DNA from: Salisapilia sapeloensis CBS 127946
Taxonomy: Eukaryota > Protista > Oomycota
DNA: 64,000 nt
Assembly (NCBI GenBank): GCA_023334545.1
Contig: JAADVB010000015.1
Location: 62,001 to 126,000 of the forward strand
Direction of reading: 5' to 3'
Part shown: piece after piece, positions 16,916 through 24,279 of the stretch
Layout of the letters: every line of letters starts with the position of its first letter
How positions within the stretch are numbered: position 1 is the first letter of the stretch
Translations under genes and position numbers: made by a program
Notes under the pieces: model-generated
Seen by the model: the letters and a program-made list of their open reading frames with translations, nothing else
Database searches by the model: none
What the model was told of the DNA's origin: nothing

Positions 16916-18235
16916 CTACTCGAGGTCCTCGCCTTCGAACTCGTCCTCGTGTTCATACTGCATCGCCATCGCCGTCGCCACCACCGCGTCTCGCCTCAGC
17001 TGTTCATAGTAACGCATGGCAGCGTACTGGTCTCCTTCCGACGCCGCCATCTCGAGCGCCATCTTTGCGTCTTCATCCTCCTCATCCTCCTGGTTTGATG
17101 TAGAAAGCATGCTGTCACCTGCCGCCAGCAGCGTCGGGAAAATTGGGCTATGACTCGCAGGAACAAGGCTCATGCTCGGAGGAGGTAGCGACGCCAGCTT
17201 GCTTGCCGTCGCCAGTGCCGCCTGGAACATGTCGGCCGACATCTGGATCTCTTGTTCATTGAAGCGACTGACGCTACGACGCTCGAGGAACTCGTAGATG
17301 CGGGCGACGAGGTCTGTGGCGTAGGTGCCAATATCCTCCACTTCATTTGACGTCAAGTGCCACAGCTCATCGCCTTCCGAGCACTCGATGGTGCTTCGAC
17401 AGATCGGACAAGTCTTGTTCTGAGCGCTCCAGTGCTGGAAGCAGCTTAAGCAAAAGCTATGGGTGCAAGGGAGCACGACCTGCTTGCGCTTGTCCATGCA
17501 TATCTGGCACTCCGCCTCGTCGAACCCGGCGTTGGACTGCACATCTCTACATGATACAACGTCAGGACGTGATTAATCAGAAAAATATCTTCAAAAGTAG
17601 TGTCGTACGTGGGATGCTCCGGTCCTTGGAACGTGTGCAAAGAGCAAGAGCGCACGTCTACAGGAGAGAAAGTGTGTAAGTTTTCAATAGAAATAGTGCT
17701 GTGGAAGAAAAAGTACCGGATAGAAAACAGTAGATGTAGTAGAATTGGCGGACTGTGAGCACCTTGGCTTGTCCGATCGTGTTGCTGAGCTCGTACGCTT
17801 GTGTGATATCTTGCGCAGACATCCCACTGTACTCGCCAGAAAAGTTGGATTTATCCTCACTGCGACGGATCTTGCGGGCCTCGACGTACACCTATTTCAT
17901 ACTTGACATGAGTTCCTATAGACCAAAGTGGCTGTTGTGGAATGGAACGTACGTTGCCTCGCAGACGCCAGACGTAGGGCAAGAGTTCGGCCGAAACGCG
18001 GTCGTTGATGACGATTCGAAAGGCGAGGTAGCACGTCTTGGGTGTCGGACACAGCCTCGCCCTATAAGGAACATTAGACGTGATGCACATTAAAGCGGCA
18101 GACGGTCGTGGGTGAGGGAATGTACCAGTCGTTGGCGTTGTGGAGGTGGTCCTGCAGATCGGCAAAGGACCCCATGGTCTGCCGAATGCGCTTTTTCATG
18201 GTGTCCTCCTGCGGAGAAGACGCCGCTTGACCCAT
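16916..18235 (-). CDS. RNF141: RING-finger E3 ligase, RNF141-like, with N-terminal myristoylation-type MG start; about 5 exons
   Basis: Start MGQAASSP. C3HC4 RING ECQICMDKRKQVVLPCTHSFCLSCFQHWSAQNKTCPICR, followed by ELWHLT..EDIGTY. The middle segment AKVLTVRQFYYIY resembles the RNF141 N-domain. Confidence 0.75.
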
Positions 18236-18798
18236 ACTTCAGATAGTAACGTTCTGCTTGGAGAAATCTGGTTGTGGCAGAGCTTGCACTTGAGCCGATG
18301 CACGCAGATTAGAAAGTGACTCTCGCTTCAATCTGTTCTTCCGATCGAGAATACAGACGACGTTTTGACGATTTGAAAATATTAAGCGTAACGCTTTTTC
18401 ATGGGACAGGAATATGGAAAAGGGAGGTGCCGTGATTTAACGAACCTATGATGTTGCTGTACGAGTCCACAACGAGGGGATTGCATCATTTGCGCGTGTG
18501 TTTTAGCACAACGTTTAGGCTCTGTCAGATCGACAGCAGCCTTGATTCGCCATAAGCACGTGGACGTCGATAAGCGTCACGCTCGTTTCCCGCCTGCGAC
18601 GTTTCATCTTTACCGAGATCTTGGCAGATGTATACCCATACAAACTTCAGTCTTGTGCGAAGCCACCTGACAGATTAATTGAAGCGACACTCAAGATACC
18701 CTGCAGCGACATCCGACGGAAAAGAGGAGCAAAGTATCGAGCTTGGGTGCCTCGACCGATCGTGACACTTACGCACCGATCTCTCTTGATAGTTCGAC

Positions 18799-21151
18799 AT
18801 GAGTGGGCTCACCGGTCAAACAGTCTCTGTCTGTGGCAACGTCTTTCGGTATATTGCATCTTATGTAGTCTATTTGCTGCTTCATGAACTCATTCGATTC
18901 TTCTGCTCGACAGCTTTGTCGAAATGATCGGCAGAGGGTCCTACGGCACAGTACGGCTCTTTCATGTTATAGGACAGTAAGAAGGCATGGCTAACTTGCA
19001 TTTACGTTAGGTGCATAAAGCTATTAACCTATCTTCCGGAGCGGCCGTCGCGATTAAACTTATCGACAAGGACAAAGTGAGGCGGCCGCATGAACGACAG
19101 AGCATTGAAAAAGAGATCGAGACCATGCGCGTGGCCGTGGAGCAGTTCGAGAATGGCCACCCACACATCATTCGACTCTTATGCACCAAAGTTCGTACCC
19201 ATCTTTTGTCTATCAAGATTATTATCTTTCTTACATGGCCTTGTAGGAATCACATGACCACATCTACATCGTCATGGTACAATTTATCCCACTGTGCGAC
19301 AACACTTGGACAGACTTACATGATTTATCTTTCTTTGTGCAGGAATACTGCGCCGGCGGAGATATTGCGATGCTCATGAAGATGCAAAATGGACTCTCGG
19401 TCGACCAAACACGATTGTACATGTCTCAATTAGGTATGTCCACCTGACGCAGCGTTCACTACTCCTTGTACTAAACACACAACAGCATCTGGGCTAACCT
19501 TCCTCCGGTCGACAAACGTCGTCCATCGCGACCTGAAACCAGCCAACCTGCTCTTGTCCAGCAAGAACCCTTCCACGGCCAAGCTCAAGATCGCAGACTT
19601 TGGCTTTGCGAGAGAGTTGAAGCAGGAAAGTATGGCCGAAAGTGTCGTCGGGTCGCCGCTTTATATGGCCCCTGAGTTGCTTGAGTACAAGAGCTACGAC
19701 GCCAAGGCAGACTTGTGGTCCGTCGGAGTCATCTTGTACGAAATGCTAGTGAACGACCATCCTTTTCTGGTTGTGGACAAGTCCCATGCGACCAACCACC
19801 TGGCTCTCCGTCGCAACATCTATCGATACTTTGAAAAGTTCGGAAAGGTGCGATTCCCTCCGTCCCTGAATGCCCCAAAGGAATGTCAAGACTTGGTGGA
19901 AGGACTGCTGCGTGTGGATCCTAGGAAACGAATTTCCTTTGAAGAGTTTTTCAACGCCCCTTTCCTACTGCCTCCCACGCCTTCAGAGCCAGAGCAGCCA
20001 TTGCAGAGATCGAGAGAGACGCAGGCACTGGTGGCGGAAGACCCGATGGAGTGTGAGGAGTGGTTAGCAGCGAGCGACGAGGAATATGTGATTGTGGACA
20101 AAGAGTATGAGGAGATTGGACGCCAGGTGCTGGACGATCAGGACGATGCCACTGATGCGCAGGTGACGGACGTGGTCGTGGACACGACTACGCCGCCGTC
20201 GACGCCAAAAGAAGATAACAAGTGGACGGACGAGCAGCAGGTGGAAGAGCTGCTCGGCATCTGCTACAAGAGCTTTGACGTCGGCAGCGTGGCACTGTTC
20301 GTCCCGACGCCGCTCGGCCACTTTATCGCTTTCCACGAAGGCTGTCCTCACTATTATCTTTCGGAAGAGACCATCGCTGCGTTCAAGAAAGAGGACGGAT
20401 CGTATGTTGCTCTTACTCTTGTATCAAAGCACAAGGTTTAATGGTCTGGTGATAGAAATCCGCCCTACGTCCTGGGCAGCATCGTATTCATCGAAGACTG
20501 CGTCGCAGCAGCGGTACCATGCACTTGATATCATAGCACTCGACAACTGGTTGTGACTTTCTCTTCTATAGGAGAATCCGTATGCGCTAAAGGATGGGAC
20601 GACGTACCACGTCGTGATGGTAGCTCCTCTGCTGTCCTCTTCCTCCCACCATTCAGAACAAGCAGGCACTGGTGGCAGTCTAGGATTTGATGAAACTCCA
20701 GCAGAGCTGCCGTTGTCTCAATCTCTGACGGCCAAGTCGCCGACGAACGCTGAGGCTGTGCAAGTGAAGACTGCCGCGACGGCGACTGGAGGCAAGATGG
20801 AGCACCAGCGCATCTCGTTCCGCAACTTCCAGATCAGTCACTTGGCGCTCTTCTTCTTAAAGGGAGGCAAGCTGCCGTACATGGCCTTCAATGAAGGCGC
20901 TCCGAACTACTACCTGGCGAACGAAAGCATACAAGCAGCGGTGCAAGGGAGTGAGGACAAGACTGCTCCGGCATACATTCTGGGCGAAGTTATCATCATC
21001 GACACATTCCAAGCGACCGAGGTACGTCTTGCTAGCTTCTTTTAGGTTGTTATTGAAGCTGATAATACGTGCATAGGACTTTAACCCGTACCGACTGGCG
21101 TACGGTACACGCTTCTATGTGGTGACAGTGGCGAATCCAAAGAGGCGTTAG
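18799..21151 (+). CDS. ATG1: ATG1/ULK-family Ser/Thr kinase with two C-terminal ATG11/FIP200 Claw-like domains; 9 exons
   Basis: Spliced kinase: GRGSYGTV, VAIK, VMEYCAGGD, HRDLKPANLLLS, LKIADFGFAR, ESVVGSPLYMAPE, YDAKADLWSVGVILYEML. Introns 18849-18913, 18951-19010, 19191-19246, 19277-19342, 19434-19485, 20402-20455, 20514-20571, 21022-21076; all GT-AG and all preserve frame. Confidence 0.88.
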
Positions 21152-21238
21152 ACTTCTATTCTCTTTACTTTGTTTTGGCAAAAAGGGTGGCACGCAAAAG
21201 TAAATAAATCATGTCGTTTTGTACCTCTACCAGCCTCT

Positions 21239-22306
21239 TCATACCAGCGCATACGCCTTCACTTGATTCGTCGTGTCTGCTACGTACAACATATTGTCGG
21301 ACGCGGTGCTCGTCACGGCATTCGATTTGGCCTGGACGTGGAACTGCTTCAAGAGGAATTTTTCATCTGCGCTCTGGTCATTCCGGCTGGCGTTGGCATA
21401 GTCCCAGACGCACACCTTCCTATCGTTACCACATGAGATCAGCCATTCGTCCTTCTTGAACGCTGGGAAGTGCACTTGGTTCACAACGCCCGTGTGCTCC
21501 TCCAGCTTCCGCACCACGTTCTTCGTCGTAAAGTCCACGACTGCGACGGAAAAGTCGCCCAGACCGGCAGCCAGCGTCTTGCCCGCGCTGTGGAAGGCGA
21601 TGGAGTGGACTAGAGGAGGGTTGACCATCTGGTTGGCGTTAGCTGAAGTGGGCGTCGCTGTCTCGATCGAGTCCAACGCTACGGCGCCACCAGCGTTGAA
21701 GTCGATTTTAGATCGCAGACGACCTCGACTAAAGTCCCAGAATAGCAGGAAGCCGTCCAACCCGCAGGACGCAATATCCCACGAACTCTTTGGTCGGAAC
21801 AACGCTTGCATGCACAGGTTGTCATGCTGGTTGCGCAGCGTTTTCGTTAGTCGGTTCGTGTTCGTGTCATAAATGCAGATGGCGCCACTGTCGTCTGCAG
21901 CACAGAGCAAGTGGGATTGATTCTTCGTTGGGTGGAAGTGGAGGGAATTGATCTCGTCCGTGTTTGCCTGTAGCGCTTCGTTGCATGTCGAAGTCAGAAT
22001 CATCCCTTCCTGACGCAGGTCAAAGGATAAAACTTGGCTGCCTGTCGCTACATAAACAGTATCTTTCCCCACTCGATCAAATGCAATCGCATTGACTTCC
22101 GTAGGTGCTTTATCAGACGACGAATAGCCAAGCGCAGTCGTGACATTCAAGCACCGACTGGTCTTGGCCGTTCGTGTGTCCCATAGTCTGCAGGTGCCGT
22201 CGTCACTTCCAGAGGCTAGCGTGTGCGTGTGGATAGACTCATCTGCAAATAAAGCGTTCACATCCGCTCGATGGCCTTTGAATACAGAGGTCGGTGCGGC
22301 CGTCAT
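21239..22306 (-). CDS. WDR53: WD40-repeat protein, WDR53-like
   Basis: GH..DVNAL, EINSL..AADDSGAICIYD, LFRPK..IASCGLDGFLLFW, VNPPLVHSIA match the recalled WDR53 pattern. Confidence 0.75.
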   Translation of the reverse strand: MTAAPTSVFKGHRADVNALFADESIHTHTLASGSDDGTCRLWDTRTAKTSRCLNVTTALGYSSSDKAPTEVNAIAFDRVGKDTVYVATGSQVLSFDLRQEGMILTSTCNEALQANTDEINSLHFHPTKNQSHLLCAADDSGAICIYDTNTNRLTKTLRNQHDNLCMQALFRPKSSWDIASCGLDGFLLFWDFSRGRLRSKIDFNAGGAVALDSIETATPTSANANQMVNPPLVHSIAFHSAGKTLAAGLGDFSVAVVDFTTKNVVRKLEEHTGVVNQVHFPAFKKDEWLISCGNDRKVCVWDYANASRNDQSADEKFLLKQFHVQAKSNAVTSTASDNMLYVADTTNQVKAYALV

Positions 22307-22517
22307 GAATGTCCAATTGGTCTCCAGTCGATTCGCGTTCCAAGTTCGTGCCGTAGACTGTTGTGGACCACACCACTTTCAGATTGGATGACACATCTGA
22401 TAACAAGCCACCAAGGTATTCACTTTATCTTGGAAACTGTATGTAGTCATCGTATTCTTTGAACTGGTTGAACTTGAAACATACGCATAAATCGATTTGA
22501 GATCGAGCACCCAAGGC

Positions 22518-24279
22518 ATGCTACGCTTCCTTCGCCACACGCCGTTCAAACACACCCGGACGCTGAGGCAATTCTCAGCTGTTGGCGGAGTCCTCCCGCA
22601 GCCCCCGTCCTCCTCTCCGTCCTACCTCGATGGACATGTCGACGTCAAGTCATCCGACTTTCAGGCCAATCTAGCGCAAATGGACGAACTCACGACCGTC
22701 CTGCGTGATCGTATGCGCCACGTTCGTCGTGGTGGAGGCGAAAAAGCCGTCGAGCGCCACAAGGAACGAGGCAAGCTGCCTGCTCGCGACCGGATCGACT
22801 CTTTATTGGATCCAGGTTCCCCGTTCTTGGAGCTCTCGCCGCTCGCTGCGTACGACATGTACGACAAGAACGTCCCTTCTGCCGGTATCATCACTGGCAT
22901 CGGTCGCGTACAGGGCGTTGAGTGCATGGTCTTGGCGAACGATGCGACTGTGAAAGGAGGAACGTATTTTCCACTGACGGTCAAGAAGCATCTTCGAGCG
23001 CAGGAGGTCGCACTGGAGAATGAGCTCCCGTGCATCTACCTCGTAGACTCTGGAGGAGCTTTCCTGCCATTACAGAGCGAGATCTTTCCCGACAAGGAGC
23101 ACTTTGGACGCGAGTTTTACAACCAGGCGAGAATGTCGGCCAAAGGCATTCCGCAGATCGCAGTCGTCATGGGCAGGTGAGTTCATTCTAGTACTTTATA
23201 TCTATTGCATACTAAAAGTGTTTTGCAGTTGTACGGCTGGAGGTGCCTACGTGCCTGCCATGTGTGACGAAAGTGTGATTGTCAAAGGCACGGGAAGTGT
23301 CTTTCTAGGCGGACCTCCGCTCGTGAAGGCTGCGACGGGTGAAGTGGTAACAAATGAAGAGCTTGGAGGAGCTGACGTCCATTGCCGGACGTCTGGCGTC
23401 ACGGACCACTACGCCAACAACGATTTCCACGCTCTCGAGATCACGAGAAACATTTTAAAACACCTGAACCGAGTGTCTCCGACGCCTCGCACCAAGGTCG
23501 AGAACTACTCGGAGCCAAAGTACAGCCCAGAGGAGCTGGGCGGTCTCATTCCGACGGACTCTCGACAGCCCTTCGACGTGCGCAAAGTCATCGCTCGTAT
23601 CGTCGACGGCAGCGAGTTTGATGAGTTTAAAAAGCTATACGGAACTACTGTCGTCACGGGATTTGCCTCCATCTACGGCATGCAGGTGGGTATCGTCGCC
23701 AACAATGGCATCTTATTCGCCGAGAGCGCACAAAAGGTGGCGCACTTTGTCGAGCTCTGTACGCAGCGAAAGATCCCGCTCGTCTTTTTGCAGAACATCA
23801 CGGGCTTCATGGTCGGCAGCAGCGCCGAAAGTGGAGGTATCGCCAAGCATGGAGCCAAGATGGTGACTGCTGTCTCGTGTGCAGACGTGCCGAAAATCAC
23901 ATGTATCATCGGAGGGTCCTACGGCGCAGGCAACTATGGCATGTGCGGTCGAGCGTTCGGACCGAGGTTCTTGTACATGTGGCCGAACGCTCGTATCGGA
24001 GTGATGGGAGGCGAGCAGGCTGCGAATGTTCTGGCGCAAGTCCAGCGAGACAATAAAGAGAGGAAGGGCGAAGAGTGGAGCGTAGAGGAGGAGAATGAGT
24101 TTAAGCAGCCGATCCTGGACAAGTACGAGGAGGAGAGCTCTGCGTACTTTTCTACGGCAAGGCTATGGGACGACGGCATCATCGACCCGAAGGACACTAG
24201 AAAGGTATTGGGGCTGAGTCTTGCAGCCGCTGTGAAGGAGAAGGAAGATGAGACCAAGTTCGGAGTCTTCCGGATGTAA
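22518..24279 (+). CDS. MCCC2: Methylcrotonoyl-CoA carboxylase beta chain, mitochondrial; 2 exons
   Basis: Motifs [69 protein letters not shown]-like, FGVFRM*. Intron 23177-23228. Confidence 0.96.

What the first reader, a model, noticed from the sequence alone, without database searches (positions are those of the whole stretch)
18799..21151. ATG1/ULK kinase fused to two tandem ATG11/FIP200 Claw-like domains: a possible single-polypeptide autophagy-initiation / cargo-sensing module
Seen: after splicing, the ULK-type kinase is followed by two copies of one domain. Copy 1 (~20259-20622) reads ICYKSFDVGSVALFVP..FIAFHEGCPHYYLSEETI..YVLGSIVFIE..ENPYALKDGTTYHVVMV. Copy 2 (~20809-21151) reads RISFRNFQISHLALFF..YMAFNEGAPNYYLANESI..YILGEVIIID..FNPYRLAYGTRFYVVTV. 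Knowledge: this pattern (kIs..dFqvg.laLf..Y.L..ES..wi.G.i..e..Np..l..gt.fy.v) is the C-terminal Claw of Atg11/RB1CC1-FIP200/plant ATG11, which binds phospho-FIR motifs of cargo receptors. Canonical Atg1/ULK1 ends in tandem MIT domains that bind Atg13, and I see no MIT region here. Inference: the kinase may be recruited to cargo directly, bypassing the ATG13-ATG17/ATG11 scaffold. The ORF track fragments this gene, so the architecture is easy to miss.
Basis: partly seen in the sequence, partly recalled or inferred. Interest (0 to 1): 0.82.

Follow-up and report, generated by a model that had tools for sequence, protein, structure and literature searches.

The report
Oomycete Atg1 kinase with two Claws
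This is a real, expressed oomycete gene in which an autophagy-starting kinase (Atg1/ULK type) carries two cargo-receptor-binding "Claw" domains instead of its usual tail; the layout was noted for oomycetes in 2017, but nobody has tested what it does.

Summary
Window 18799-21151 (+) is one 9-exon, 628-aa gene. All 8 GT-AG introns (52-66 nt) appear in single RNA-run contigs that join the kinase and Claw exons.

The N-terminus is a complete ULK-family kinase. Its best solved relatives are ULK3, ULK1 and ULK2; its nearest non-orthologues in the large database are MIT-bearing ATG1s.

The linker holds a strictly conserved EEYVIV motif. It matches the verified Atg8-binding LIRs of yeast Atg1 (REYVVV) and ULK1/2 (DDFVMV/DDFVLV).

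The C-terminus has two Pfam ATG11 domains that are 38% identical to each other. In AlphaFold models of the closest orthologue, each matches the FIP200 Claw (Z 10-11.5; next unrelated fold Z ~4.6). No MIT region is present.

The layout is not new. Chen et al. 2017 (PMC5431975) described oomycete "Atg1a", with an Atg11 domain replacing DUF3543, alongside a canonical Atg1b, Atg13 and Atg11. I found full-length orthologues in all sampled oomycete orders.

Added here:
- The Claw duplication predates the oomycete radiation.
- Claw2 is at least as conserved as the kinase.
- The FIP200 phospho-binding residues K1569/R1573 are absent, but the hydrophobic pocket is kept.
- Two metagenomic relatives lie outside the sampled oomycete clade.

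Direct recruitment to cargo is plausible but untested. "Bypassing the scaffold" is overstated.

The parts
18799..21151 (+). Whole coding region of the Claw-kinase gene (9 exons, 628 aa, stop at 21149-21151). The transcript starts near 18695.
   Evidence: Gene model; all 8 junctions and single-contig continuity in RNA runs.
18847..19958 (+). ULK/Atg1-family protein kinase domain (aa ~17-287), spread over exons 1/2-6. Motifs present: GRGSYG (aa 23), VAIK (42), HRDLKPAN (143), DFG (167), GSPLYMAPE (185).
   Evidence: Pfam Pkinase 1.7e-42 on exon 6; motif positions; orthologue P0066 hits ULK3/ULK1/ULK2 best in the PDB.
20079..20096 (+). LIR/FIR-like short linear motif EEYVIV (aa 328-333). It sits in the conserved island W-x3-S-[DE]-E-Y-V-[IML]-V-[DE]-x-E-[YF]-E-[DE]-[VI]-G-R of the otherwise divergent linker.
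   Evidence: Conserved in all orthologues examined. Matches the verified LIRs of yeast Atg1 REYVVV, ULK1 DDFVMV and ULK2 DDFVLV listed in PMC5119064. Fits the FIR core consensus of PMC7946963.
20259..20622 (+). Claw domain 1 (aa 388-471), interrupted by introns 20402-20455 and 20514-20571.
   Evidence: Pfam ATG11 5.2e-7 on the exon-6 part; jackhmmer domain 383-476; AF2 model of orthologue Claw1 matches FIP200 Claw at Z 10.6-11.5.
20623..20808 (+). Inter-Claw linker (aa 472-533), predicted disordered. It contains a small conserved ELPLSQ-type island.
   Evidence: pLDDT below 50 in the AF2 model of the orthologue; alignment.
20809..21139 (+). Claw domain 2 (aa 534-625), interrupted by intron 21022-21076. 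It is the most conserved part of the protein.
   Evidence: Pfam ATG11 2.9e-14; 76-86% identity to oomycete orthologues against 71-83% for the kinase; Foldseek top 24 hits are all FIP200 Claw; VIA Z 10.3-11.3 over FIP200 1493-1592.
20402..20455 (+). Example intron (54 nt, GT..AG) inside Claw1. The other seven are 18849-18913, 18951-19010, 19191-19246, 19277-19342, 19434-19485, 20514-20571 and 21022-21076.
   Evidence: Joints table.

Best explanation
The gene is an orthologue of the oomycete 'Atg1a' paralogue. It encodes a catalytically complete Atg1/ULK-family Ser/Thr kinase that keeps the Atg1/ULK1-type Atg8-binding LIR in its disordered linker. The C-terminal tandem-MIT (Atg13-binding) module is replaced by two anciently duplicated Claw domains of the Atg11/FIP200 type. 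Shown here: the architecture, its expression as one mRNA, the Claw fold of both copies (on the closest orthologue), strong purifying selection on both Claws and on the LIR, and a single origin of the fusion within the ATG1/ULK kinase group. Inferred: the two Claws dock the kinase directly onto short hydrophobic/acidic (FIR- or Atg11BR-like) motifs of selective-autophagy receptors or other ATG factors. Two Claws in one chain would give the bivalency that FIP200 and Atg11 obtain by coiled-coil dimerisation. The LIR would tether the kinase to Atg8-decorated membranes. Clustering on multivalent cargo would then drive activation-loop autophosphorylation (the Ser at aa 182 aligns with yeast T226 and ULK1 T180). 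On this view the kinase works beside, not instead of, the canonical Atg1b-Atg13-Atg11 complex. The confidence of 0.6 is a blend of about 0.95 for the identity and architecture and about 0.45 for the proposed mechanism.
For: - Gene model and single transcript.
- Domains: Pkinase plus two ATG11 hits on window exons. The same Pkinase + 2x ATG11 layout occurs in P0001, P0005, P0087, P0082 and P0186.
- Orthologues: full-length, 59-65% identical, in Phytophthora, Peronospora, Plasmopara, Bremia, Pythium, Globisporangium, Lagenidium, Albugo, Aphanomyces, Saprolegnia, Achlya and Thraustotheca.
- Kinase family: PDB ranking ULK3 175.7 bits, ULK1 162.5, ULK2 158.3, then SIK3 146. The nearest non-orthologues are ATG1s with MIT_ATG1 or ATG1-like_MIT domains at 44-47% identity.
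- Kinase tree: Claw-kinases are monophyletic (99/96*) inside the ATG1/ULK group.
- Claw tree: all Claw1 copies form one clade and all Claw2 copies another, each 100/100*.
- Fold: both Claws match FIP200 Claw at Z 10-11.5, against about 4.6 for the next fold.
- LIR: conserved and matches verified Atg1/ULK1/ULK2 LIRs.
- Pocket: the FIP200 positions C1565/A1567/F1574/V1576/F1582 read F/A/Y/L/F in Claw2 and C/A/Y/L/Y in Claw1, by ungapped motif alignment.
- Literature: the Atg1a architecture and the coexistence of Atg1b, Atg13 and Atg11 in oomycetes are reported in PMC5431975.
Against: - There are no functional data anywhere. Silencing of PsAtg1 failed in PMC5431975.
- The FIP200 basic residues K1569/R1573 that bind phospho-FIR are not conserved, so the ligand class is unknown.
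- The best single PDB kinase hit is ULK3, not ULK1, and the tree leaves the sister group unresolved.
- AF2 gave low pTM (0.34) and did not order the LIR or pack the two Claws. Neither an intramolecular pseudo-dimer nor cis LIR-Claw binding has support.
- Whether this particular genome also has Atg1b, Atg13 and Atg11 could not be checked from one window.
Confidence: 0.6

Rival explanations
1. The Claws are a substitute assembly handle, not a cargo sensor. They bind FIR-like motifs in core autophagy factors (as the FIP200 Claw binds ATG16L1, NAP1/SINTBAD, TNIP1 and SMCR8) or in Atg13/Atg9. This would plug the kinase into the canonical initiation complex without tMIT-Atg13 contacts.
For: PDB entries of FIP200 Claw with ATG16L1, NAP1 and TNIP1 are among the matches. 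Papers on the SMCR8 and ATG16L1 interactions are listed. Oomycetes keep Atg13 and Atg11.
Against: No partner motif was identified here. Two Claws under very strong selection (Claw2 76-86% identical across orders) would be more than a simple assembly handle needs. Nothing distinguishes this reading from cargo-receptor binding in silico.
Confidence: 0.2
2. Autoinhibited switch. The conserved acidic LIR/FIR-like motif in the linker binds one of the protein's own Claws in cis and holds the kinase closed. Atg8 binding, or phosphorylation of the preceding Ser, releases it.
For: The motif S-[DE]-E-Y-V-x-V fits both the LIR and the FIR core consensus (psi-psi-Theta-x-x-Gamma, PMC7946963). It is invariant in a divergent linker. 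It lies in cis with two Claws.
Against: The AF2 model leaves the motif disordered (pLDDT 43-50) and does not dock it. The Claws lack the basic residues that would read its acidic or phospho part.
Confidence: 0.12
3. The kinase has a non-autophagy role, ULK3-like or otherwise (for example membrane trafficking or cytokinesis), and merely reuses a Claw-fold peptide-binding module.
For: The best solved kinase relative is ULK3. The position relative to canonical ATG1 is unresolved in the tree. The FIP200-type phospho-binding residues are missing.
Against: The nearest relatives in the 5.8-billion-protein search are MIT-bearing ATG1s at 44-47% identity, whereas the one ULK3-like hit (P0108) is at 37-38%. 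The linker LIR is of the Atg1/ULK1/2 type. Apart from the Claw-kinases themselves, every domain-scanned Claw hit belongs to an Atg11-type protein: most carry ATG17_like + ATG11, and one is an annotated fungal Atg11.
Confidence: 0.06
4. The fusion is a gene-model artefact: two neighbouring genes (a kinase and a Claw protein) were wrongly joined.
For: The ORF track is fragmented. Several database entries are Claw-only fragments (P0002, P0003, P0004, P0008).
Against: Single RNA contigs cross every junction in three runs from two organisms. The reading frame is continuous. The same fusion is annotated in more than 35 species, including an intronless metagenomic gene.
Confidence: 0.02

Closest known systems
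Oomycete Atg1a (Phytophthora sojae PsAtg1a and orthologues; Chen et al. 2017, Sci Rep 7:1879, PMC5431975)
   Same: Same family: an N-terminal ULK-type kinase with an Atg11 domain where canonical Atg1 has DUF3543/tMIT. The window protein is 59-65% identical end to end to Phytophthora, Plasmopara, Pythium and Saprolegnia members and nests in their clade.
   Different: It comes from a different, apparently unlisted oomycete; no database protein was flagged as the window's own. The paper's text speaks of 'an Atg11 domain'. The findings here on two Claws, their ancient duplication, the conserved LIR and the missing basic residues are not in the text passages I read (the figure was not visible).
Canonical Atg1/ULK1/ULK2
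   Same: Same kinase family and activation-loop GSPLYMAPE context. An acidic LIR ([DE][DE][YF]V-x-V) lies a few dozen residues after the kinase domain, as in yeast Atg1 427-432, ULK1 355-360 and ULK2 351-356.
   Different: There is no C-terminal tandem MIT domain (no ATG1-like_MIT1/2 or MIT_ATG1 hit), so the known Atg13-binding module is absent.
Atg11 / FIP200 (RB1CC1) C-terminal Claw domain
   Same: Pfam PF10377 membership for both copies. The Claw fold matches at Z 10-11.5 over FIP200 1492-1593. The conserved N-P-[YF] ... G-T-x-[FY] strands and hydrophobic-pocket positions are present.
   Different: There are two Claws in tandem on one chain. There is no Atg17-like scaffold domain or long coiled coil. 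FIP200 K1569/R1573 are replaced (E/P and A/P), as PMC7946963 reports for yeast Atg11. The Claws are attached directly to the kinase instead of meeting it through a complex.
ULK3 (kinase + two MIT domains)
   Same: It is the best-scoring solved kinase domain (175.7 bits), and it is likewise a kinase followed by two small peptide-binding modules.
   Different: ULK3's modules are MIT domains, not Claws. The ULK3-like sequence sampled here (P0108) is only 37-38% identical, lies on a long branch, and no LIR-type motif was found in it with the pattern I used.
S. pombe Atg1 activation by Atg11-mediated dimerisation (Pan et al. 2020, PMC7511232)
   Same: It offers a conceptual precedent that Atg11-type scaffolding alone, without Atg13 or Atg17, can activate Atg1 by bringing kinase molecules together (abstract).
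   Different: There the kinase and Atg11 are separate proteins, and the relevant Atg11 region is not the Claw.

Membership tests
ULK/Atg1 protein kinase family | Eukaryotic protein kinase domain with intact catalytic motifs (Gly loop, VAIK Lys, HRD, DFG, APE) | tested here: met
   Pfam Pkinase 1.7e-42; GRGSYG, VAIK, HRDLKPAN, DFG and GSPLYMAPE located in the spliced protein.
ULK/Atg1 protein kinase family | Kinase domain closest to ULK/ATG1 kinases rather than to other groups | tested here: met
   On orthologue P0066, ULK3, ULK1 and ULK2 rank top in the PDB. The nearest non-orthologues are MIT-bearing ATG1s. The tree places the clade inside the ATG1/ULK group, separated from the CaMK-like outgroup at 100/100*. 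The exact sister group is unresolved.
ULK/Atg1 protein kinase family | C-terminal tandem MIT (tMIT/EAT, DUF3543) domain that binds Atg13 | tested here: not met
   No MIT-type Pfam hit in the window exons or in full-length orthologues P0001, P0005, P0087, P0082 and P0186. Canonical ATG1s scanned the same way do hit MIT families.
ULK/Atg1 protein kinase family | Atg8-binding LIR in the linker after the kinase domain | tested here: inconclusive
   The sequence motif EEYVIV is present and conserved and matches verified Atg1/ULK1/ULK2 LIRs. Binding to Atg8 was not tested, and AF2 leaves the segment disordered.
Atg11/FIP200 Claw domain (Pfam PF10377) | Significant match to the family HMM | tested here: met
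   5.2e-7 (30.3 bits) and 2.9e-14 (53.7 bits) on partial exon pieces, both above the 22-bit cut-off; two stretches at 112 bits in orthologue P0001.
Atg11/FIP200 Claw domain (Pfam PF10377) | Claw fold (a short helix followed by a curved beta sheet) superposable on solved FIP200 Claw | tested here: met
   Tested on orthologue P0066. Claw2: Z 10.3-11.3, rmsd 2.4-3.4 A over 86-95 residues. Claw1: Z 10.6-11.5, rmsd 2.4-2.6 A. Foldseek top 24 are all FIP200 Claw. This was not run on the window's own spliced sequence.
Atg11/FIP200 Claw domain (Pfam PF10377) | FIP200-type basic residues (K1569, R1573) that read the acidic or phospho part of FIR motifs | tested here: not met
   Ungapped motif alignment to the FIP200 residues named in PMC7946963 gives E/P in Claw2 and A/P in Claw1. 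The same paper notes that these residues are also not conserved in yeast Atg11.
Atg11/FIP200 Claw domain (Pfam PF10377) | Hydrophobic pocket that takes the core bulky residue of the ligand | tested here: inconclusive
   The FIP200 positions C1565/A1567/F1574/V1576/F1582 read F/A/Y/L/F (Claw2) and C/A/Y/L/Y (Claw1) by sequence alignment. No side-chain-level structural check was possible.
Atg11/FIP200 scaffold proteins (whole protein) | Atg17-like scaffold domain and long dimerising coiled coils upstream of a single Claw | tested here: not met
   There is no ATG17_like hit, and the Claws are preceded by a kinase and disordered linkers. Genuine Atg11-type hits (P0019, P0020, P0044) show ATG17_like + ATG11.
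Oomycete Atg1a (kinase + Atg11 domain) | Orthology to the published oomycete proteins with this architecture | tested here: met
   End-to-end 59-65% identity; placed within the starred oomycete clade (100/99*) of the kinase tree; its Claw1 and Claw2 each fall in the corresponding oomycete clade; architecture description in PMC5431975.

The most novel reading that the evidence does not exclude
The tandem Claws act as a built-in pseudo-dimer, replacing the coiled-coil dimer of FIP200/Atg11. Together with the cis LIR/FIR motif they would make this a self-contained, scaffold-independent, autoinhibited initiator of selective autophagy. That would be a second, parallel initiation route, with a ligand code different from the FIP200 phospho-FIR code. 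It would be confined to oomycetes and a few unidentified protists.
Probability: 0.2. Interest if true: 0.7.

Novelty: new member of a known kind. Interest (0 to 1): 0.42.

Why it matters
In yeast, animals and plants the Atg1/ULK kinase meets cargo receptors only through a separate scaffold (the Atg11/FIP200 Claw). Here nature has fused the kinase to the receptor-binding module, twice over, and has kept that fusion under strong selection across all sampled oomycete orders.

This makes it a natural experiment on whether bringing the kinase straight to a Claw ligand is sufficient to start autophagosome formation. It also bears on what Claw domains recognise when they lack the FIP200 phosphate-reading residues.

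Oomycetes include major plant and animal pathogens, and the architecture was not found in plant or animal proteins in my searches. The protein could therefore be a lineage-specific handle for studying oomycete autophagy.

The value lies in functional follow-up. The architecture itself is already in the literature and in public annotations.

Tried and rejected
1. Feeding the spliced 628-aa protein to Pfam, PDB and AF2. I used stop-free exon pieces and the closest orthologue (P0066) instead.
2. The protein-atlas search on the Claw part of P0186 gave only noise (scores about 0.4, Rieske proteins), so I discarded it.
3. The search for homologous proteins with the P0186 Claw region returned nothing, so the non-oomycete relatives could not be named.
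4. The organism behind P0113/P0181 could not be identified. Its contig (L001) is 65% GC, gene-dense and apparently intron-free.
5. AF2 on LIR-Claw1-Claw2 gave no confident inter-domain packing or LIR docking. The pseudo-dimer and cis-binding ideas therefore remain speculative.
6. The search of earlier findings for ATG13, ATG101 and similar words in this genome returned nothing. The presence of the canonical complex in this genome rests on the oomycete literature only.
7. The primary LIR papers (PMC3442273, PMC3501051) are not held. I took the verified LIR sequences from the iLIR table (PMC5119064) instead.
8. I considered a diatom origin at first, because of the short introns and about 51% GC. 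I rejected it once all close homologues proved to be oomycete proteins.
Full report
**1. What is in the sequence**

ORF listing and direct reading of 18700-21300 show a + strand gene broken into short exons. I assembled nine exons: 18799-18848, 18914-18950, 19011-19190, 19247-19276, 19343-19433, 19486-20401, 20456-20513, 20572-21021 and 21077-21151. They have eight GT-AG introns of 52-66 nt and an uninterrupted 628-codon frame. No upstream ATG lies between the transcript start (about 18695) and the ATG at 18799.

**2. Transcript evidence**

Public RNA-run contigs were laid on 18500-21500.
- Every one of the eight junctions appears exactly as modelled.
- Runs X1 and X2 each hold one contig, 100% identical, that runs from 18695/18697 through all exons. 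X6, from a roughly 96%-identical relative ("organism B"), holds a 1.9-kb contig with the same eight junctions. X5 (organism B) gave short contigs with two of the junctions.
- The kinase and Claw exons are therefore one mRNA, and the "two genes" alternative is excluded.
- The contigs continue past 21151 into the convergent WD40 gene. Contigs have no direction, so this shows only that the 3' ends overlap or abut.

**3. Domains**

Pfam on stop-free exon pieces:

| Piece | Family | E-value / bits | Profile positions |
|---|---|---|---|
| Exon 6 | Pkinase | 1.7e-42 | 110-263 |
| Exon 6, aa 255-301 | ATG11 (PF10377) | 5.2e-7 / 30.3 | 37-89 |
| Exon 8 | ATG11 (PF10377) | 2.9e-14 / 53.7 | 28-106 |

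- Both ATG11 hits exceed the 22-bit curated cut-off although each piece is only part of a domain.
- The two copies (aa 388-471 and 534-625) are 38% identical (E 2e-18).
- Catalytic motifs are all present: GRGSYG (aa 23), VAIK (42), HRDLKPAN (143), DFG (167), GSPLYMAPE (185).
- No MIT-type family is hit, either here or in full-length orthologues. Canonical ATG1s scanned the same way do hit ATG1-like_MIT1/2 or MIT_ATG1.

**4. Relatives and organism**

An exhaustive HMMER search with exon 8 against 1.84 billion representatives found only 59 proteins at E<=1e-3.
- The best, P0001 (Phytophthora ramorum, 698 aa), has Pkinase + 2x ATG11.
- A follow-up search listed the same architecture in Phytophthora (many species), Peronospora, Hyaloperonospora, Plasmopara, Bremia, Nothophytophthora, Globisporangium, Pythium, Lagenidium, Albugo, Aphanomyces, Achlya, Saprolegnia and Thraustotheca. 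That covers both the saprolegnian and peronosporalean sides of the oomycetes.
- The spliced window protein aligns end to end with these at 59-65% identity.
- In a kinase-domain tree it falls in the peronosporalean clade next to Phytophthora + Plasmopara (82/82; the clade itself 100/98*).
- No database protein was flagged as the window's own, so the source is an oomycete whose protein is not in the collection in full length.

**5. Prior knowledge**

Chen et al. 2017 (PMC5431975) state that in oomycetes [quoted passage not shown]. They add that Atg1b is the conserved form, that Atg13 and an Atg11 carrying an extra Atg17 domain are present, and that attempts to silence PsAtg1 gave no transformants.
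- Database names such as "ULK/ULK protein kinase", "Serine/threonine-protein kinase involved in autophagy" and "Autophagy-related protein 11" are attached to orthologues.
- Full-text searches found no later functional or structural work on this fusion.
- The architecture is therefore published and annotated, but functionally untouched.

**6. Which kind of kinase**

- Orthologue P0066 hits ULK3 (175.7 bits), ULK1 (162.5) and ULK2 (158.3) ahead of SIK3 (146) in the PDB.
- In the 5.8-billion-protein search, the nearest single-kinase non-orthologues (44-47% identity) are ATG1-type proteins with MIT domains. They include an Aphanomyces "ULK/ULK" protein that is probably Atg1b, Balamuthia atg1 and plant ATG1s. 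The one ULK3-like sequence is at 37-38%.
- The tree makes all Claw-kinases one clade (99/96*) inside the ATG1/ULK group, separated from the outgroup at 100/100*. It does not resolve their sister; the weakly supported neighbours are MIT-bearing kinases.

**7. A conserved LIR**

The linkers are divergent (11-42% identity) and predicted disordered, except for one island: W-x3-S-[DE]-E-Y-V-[IML]-V-[DE]-x-E-[YF]-E-[DE]-[VI]-G-R. It is present in every oomycete orthologue examined. In the window it reads EEYVIV at aa 328-333, nt 20079-20096.
- The experimentally verified LIRs of yeast Atg1 (REYVVV, 427-432), ULK1 (DDFVMV, 355-360) and ULK2 (DDFVLV, 351-356) are listed in PMC5119064. They have the same form and a comparable position after the kinase domain.
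- The metagenomic relative P0186 carries DDFVLV, identical to the ULK2 motif. Several MIT-bearing ATG1s near the clade have similar motifs.
- This is a second Atg1/ULK1-type hallmark and argues for an autophagy role.

**8. The Claws**

- *Fold.* AF2 on P0066:318-700 with 26 aligned sequences gave confident Claws (pLDDT 65-92) and disordered linkers. Foldseek's top 24 PDB hits are all FIP200 Claw (E 1e-6 to 2e-5, target-normalised TM 0.53-0.75); the next hit has E 0.03. VIA-align places model residues 286-382 (Claw2) on FIP200 1493-1592 at Z 10.3-11.3, with the next fold at 4.6. A separate model of Claw1 (pLDDT 76) matches FIP200 1492-1593 at Z 10.6-11.5 and rmsd 2.4-2.6 A, with the next fold at 4.7. 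Both copies are therefore genuine Claw folds.
- *History.* In a Claw-domain tree, all oomycete Claw1 copies form one clade and all Claw2 copies another, each 100/100*. The duplication is therefore older than the split of the oomycete orders.
- *Conservation.* Claw2 is 76-86% identical between the window and other oomycetes, at least as conserved as the kinase (71-83%). Claw1 is 65-76%.
- *Binding site.* I used the FIP200 residues named in PMC7946963 and an ungapped alignment anchored on the shared L-G, N-x-[FY] and G-T-x-[FY] motifs.

| FIP200 residues | Role | Claw2 | Claw1 |
|---|---|---|---|
| C1565, A1567, F1574, V1576, F1582 | Large hydrophobic pocket | F, A, Y, L, F | C, A, Y, L, Y |
| K1569, R1573 | Read the acidic or phospho part of FIR | E, P | A, P |

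The same paper notes that these two basic residues are also missing in yeast Atg11 and suggests a different binding mode there. The hydrophobic core of ligand recognition is thus plausibly kept, while FIP200-style phosphate reading is not.

**9. Beyond the sampled oomycetes**

- P0186 (767 aa, JGI metagenome, intronless gene) has kinase + LIR + two Claws.
- P0113/P0181 (about 805 aa, ENA metagenomes) have kinase, an FVLV motif, a degenerate first Claw and a clear second Claw. Their contig is gene-dense and 65% GC.
- Both group with the oomycete Claw-kinases (99/96*) but on long branches. Their organisms could not be identified.
- Among the 59 Claw hits, the only kinase-bearing ones belong to these clusters and the oomycete clusters. 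The domain-scanned others are Atg11-type proteins: most carry ATG17_like + ATG11, and one is an annotated fungal Atg11.

**10. Mechanism**

*Shown:* an expressed, catalytically complete Atg1/ULK-family kinase with a conserved Atg1-type LIR and two conserved Claw-fold domains, and no tMIT.

*Inferred:*
- The Claws dock the kinase directly on short hydrophobic/acidic motifs of selective-autophagy receptors or ATG factors.
- Two Claws give the bivalency that FIP200 and Atg11 obtain by dimerisation.
- The LIR tethers the kinase to Atg8 membranes.
- Clustering activates the kinase through activation-loop autophosphorylation. The abstract of PMC7511232 gives a precedent for Atg13-independent, Atg11-driven Atg1 activation.

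Oomycetes keep Atg1b, Atg13 and Atg11, so this is most likely a parallel, specialised arm, not a bypass of the scaffold.

*Rivals:* the Claws may bind core ATG proteins instead of cargo; there may be cis autoinhibition by the linker motif (not supported by AF2); or the kinase may have a non-autophagy role (disfavoured by the LIR and by its nearest relatives).

**11. Verdict**

The structural interpretation is supported, while the functional interpretation is plausible but untested and partly overstated.

On novelty, this is a new member of a published family (oomycete Atg1a). The new details found here are the ancient tandem duplication, the conserved LIR, the loss of FIP200-type basic residues, and the relatives outside the sampled oomycetes.

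Interest is moderate: the protein is a neat natural experiment for the autophagy field, but not a discovery of a new architecture.

Noticed in passing
window 21239-22306 (-): An intronless 355-aa WD40-repeat ORF converges on the Claw-kinase gene. RNA contigs run continuously from the kinase gene's 3' end into it, so the two 3' ends overlap or abut within about 90 nt.
   Followed up: partly
window 16916-17542 (-): A 208-aa ORF with a C3HC4-type RING-finger signature and an acidic C-terminus lies upstream, divergent from the kinase gene.
   Followed up: no
window 22497-23180 (+) and onward: This ORF fragment looks like the beta (carboxyltransferase) subunit of methylcrotonoyl-CoA/propionyl-CoA carboxylase.
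   Followed up: no
window 20623-20808 (+), aa ~498-505: The disordered inter-Claw linker holds a second small conserved island. It reads E-L-P-L-S-Q in peronosporaleans and P-F-x-M/L-S in saprolegnians, and may be a phospho-site or docking motif.
   Followed up: no
P0042 / P0187 (Tulasnella sp. Atg11-like proteins): These fungal Atg11-type proteins show two full Claw domains about 170 residues apart. The two copies cluster together in the Claw tree, which indicates an independent, recent tandem duplication or a gene-model artefact.
   Followed up: no
L001:8001-10418 (ENA metagenome contig, 65% GC): This is an intronless kinase-Claw gene (P0181) in a gene-dense eukaryotic contig, next to MetH, an LSM protein, a thiolase and a kinesin. 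The organism is unidentified. It may push the origin of the fusion beyond the oomycetes.
   Followed up: partly
Logan fragments P0011, P0013, P0014, P0039, P0043: These short transcript-derived proteins each carry two Claw hits. Domains 1 and 2 of P0011 (and domain 1 of P0013) group with Claw1 and Claw2 of the metagenomic kinase P0186. They are probably fragments of further Claw-kinases from unsampled protists.
   Followed up: no
window 18731-21019, run X6 (organism B): A related organism's transcript is about 96% identical with identical splice sites. The listed differences are overwhelmingly transitions, as expected for a closely related species or strain.
   Followed up: no
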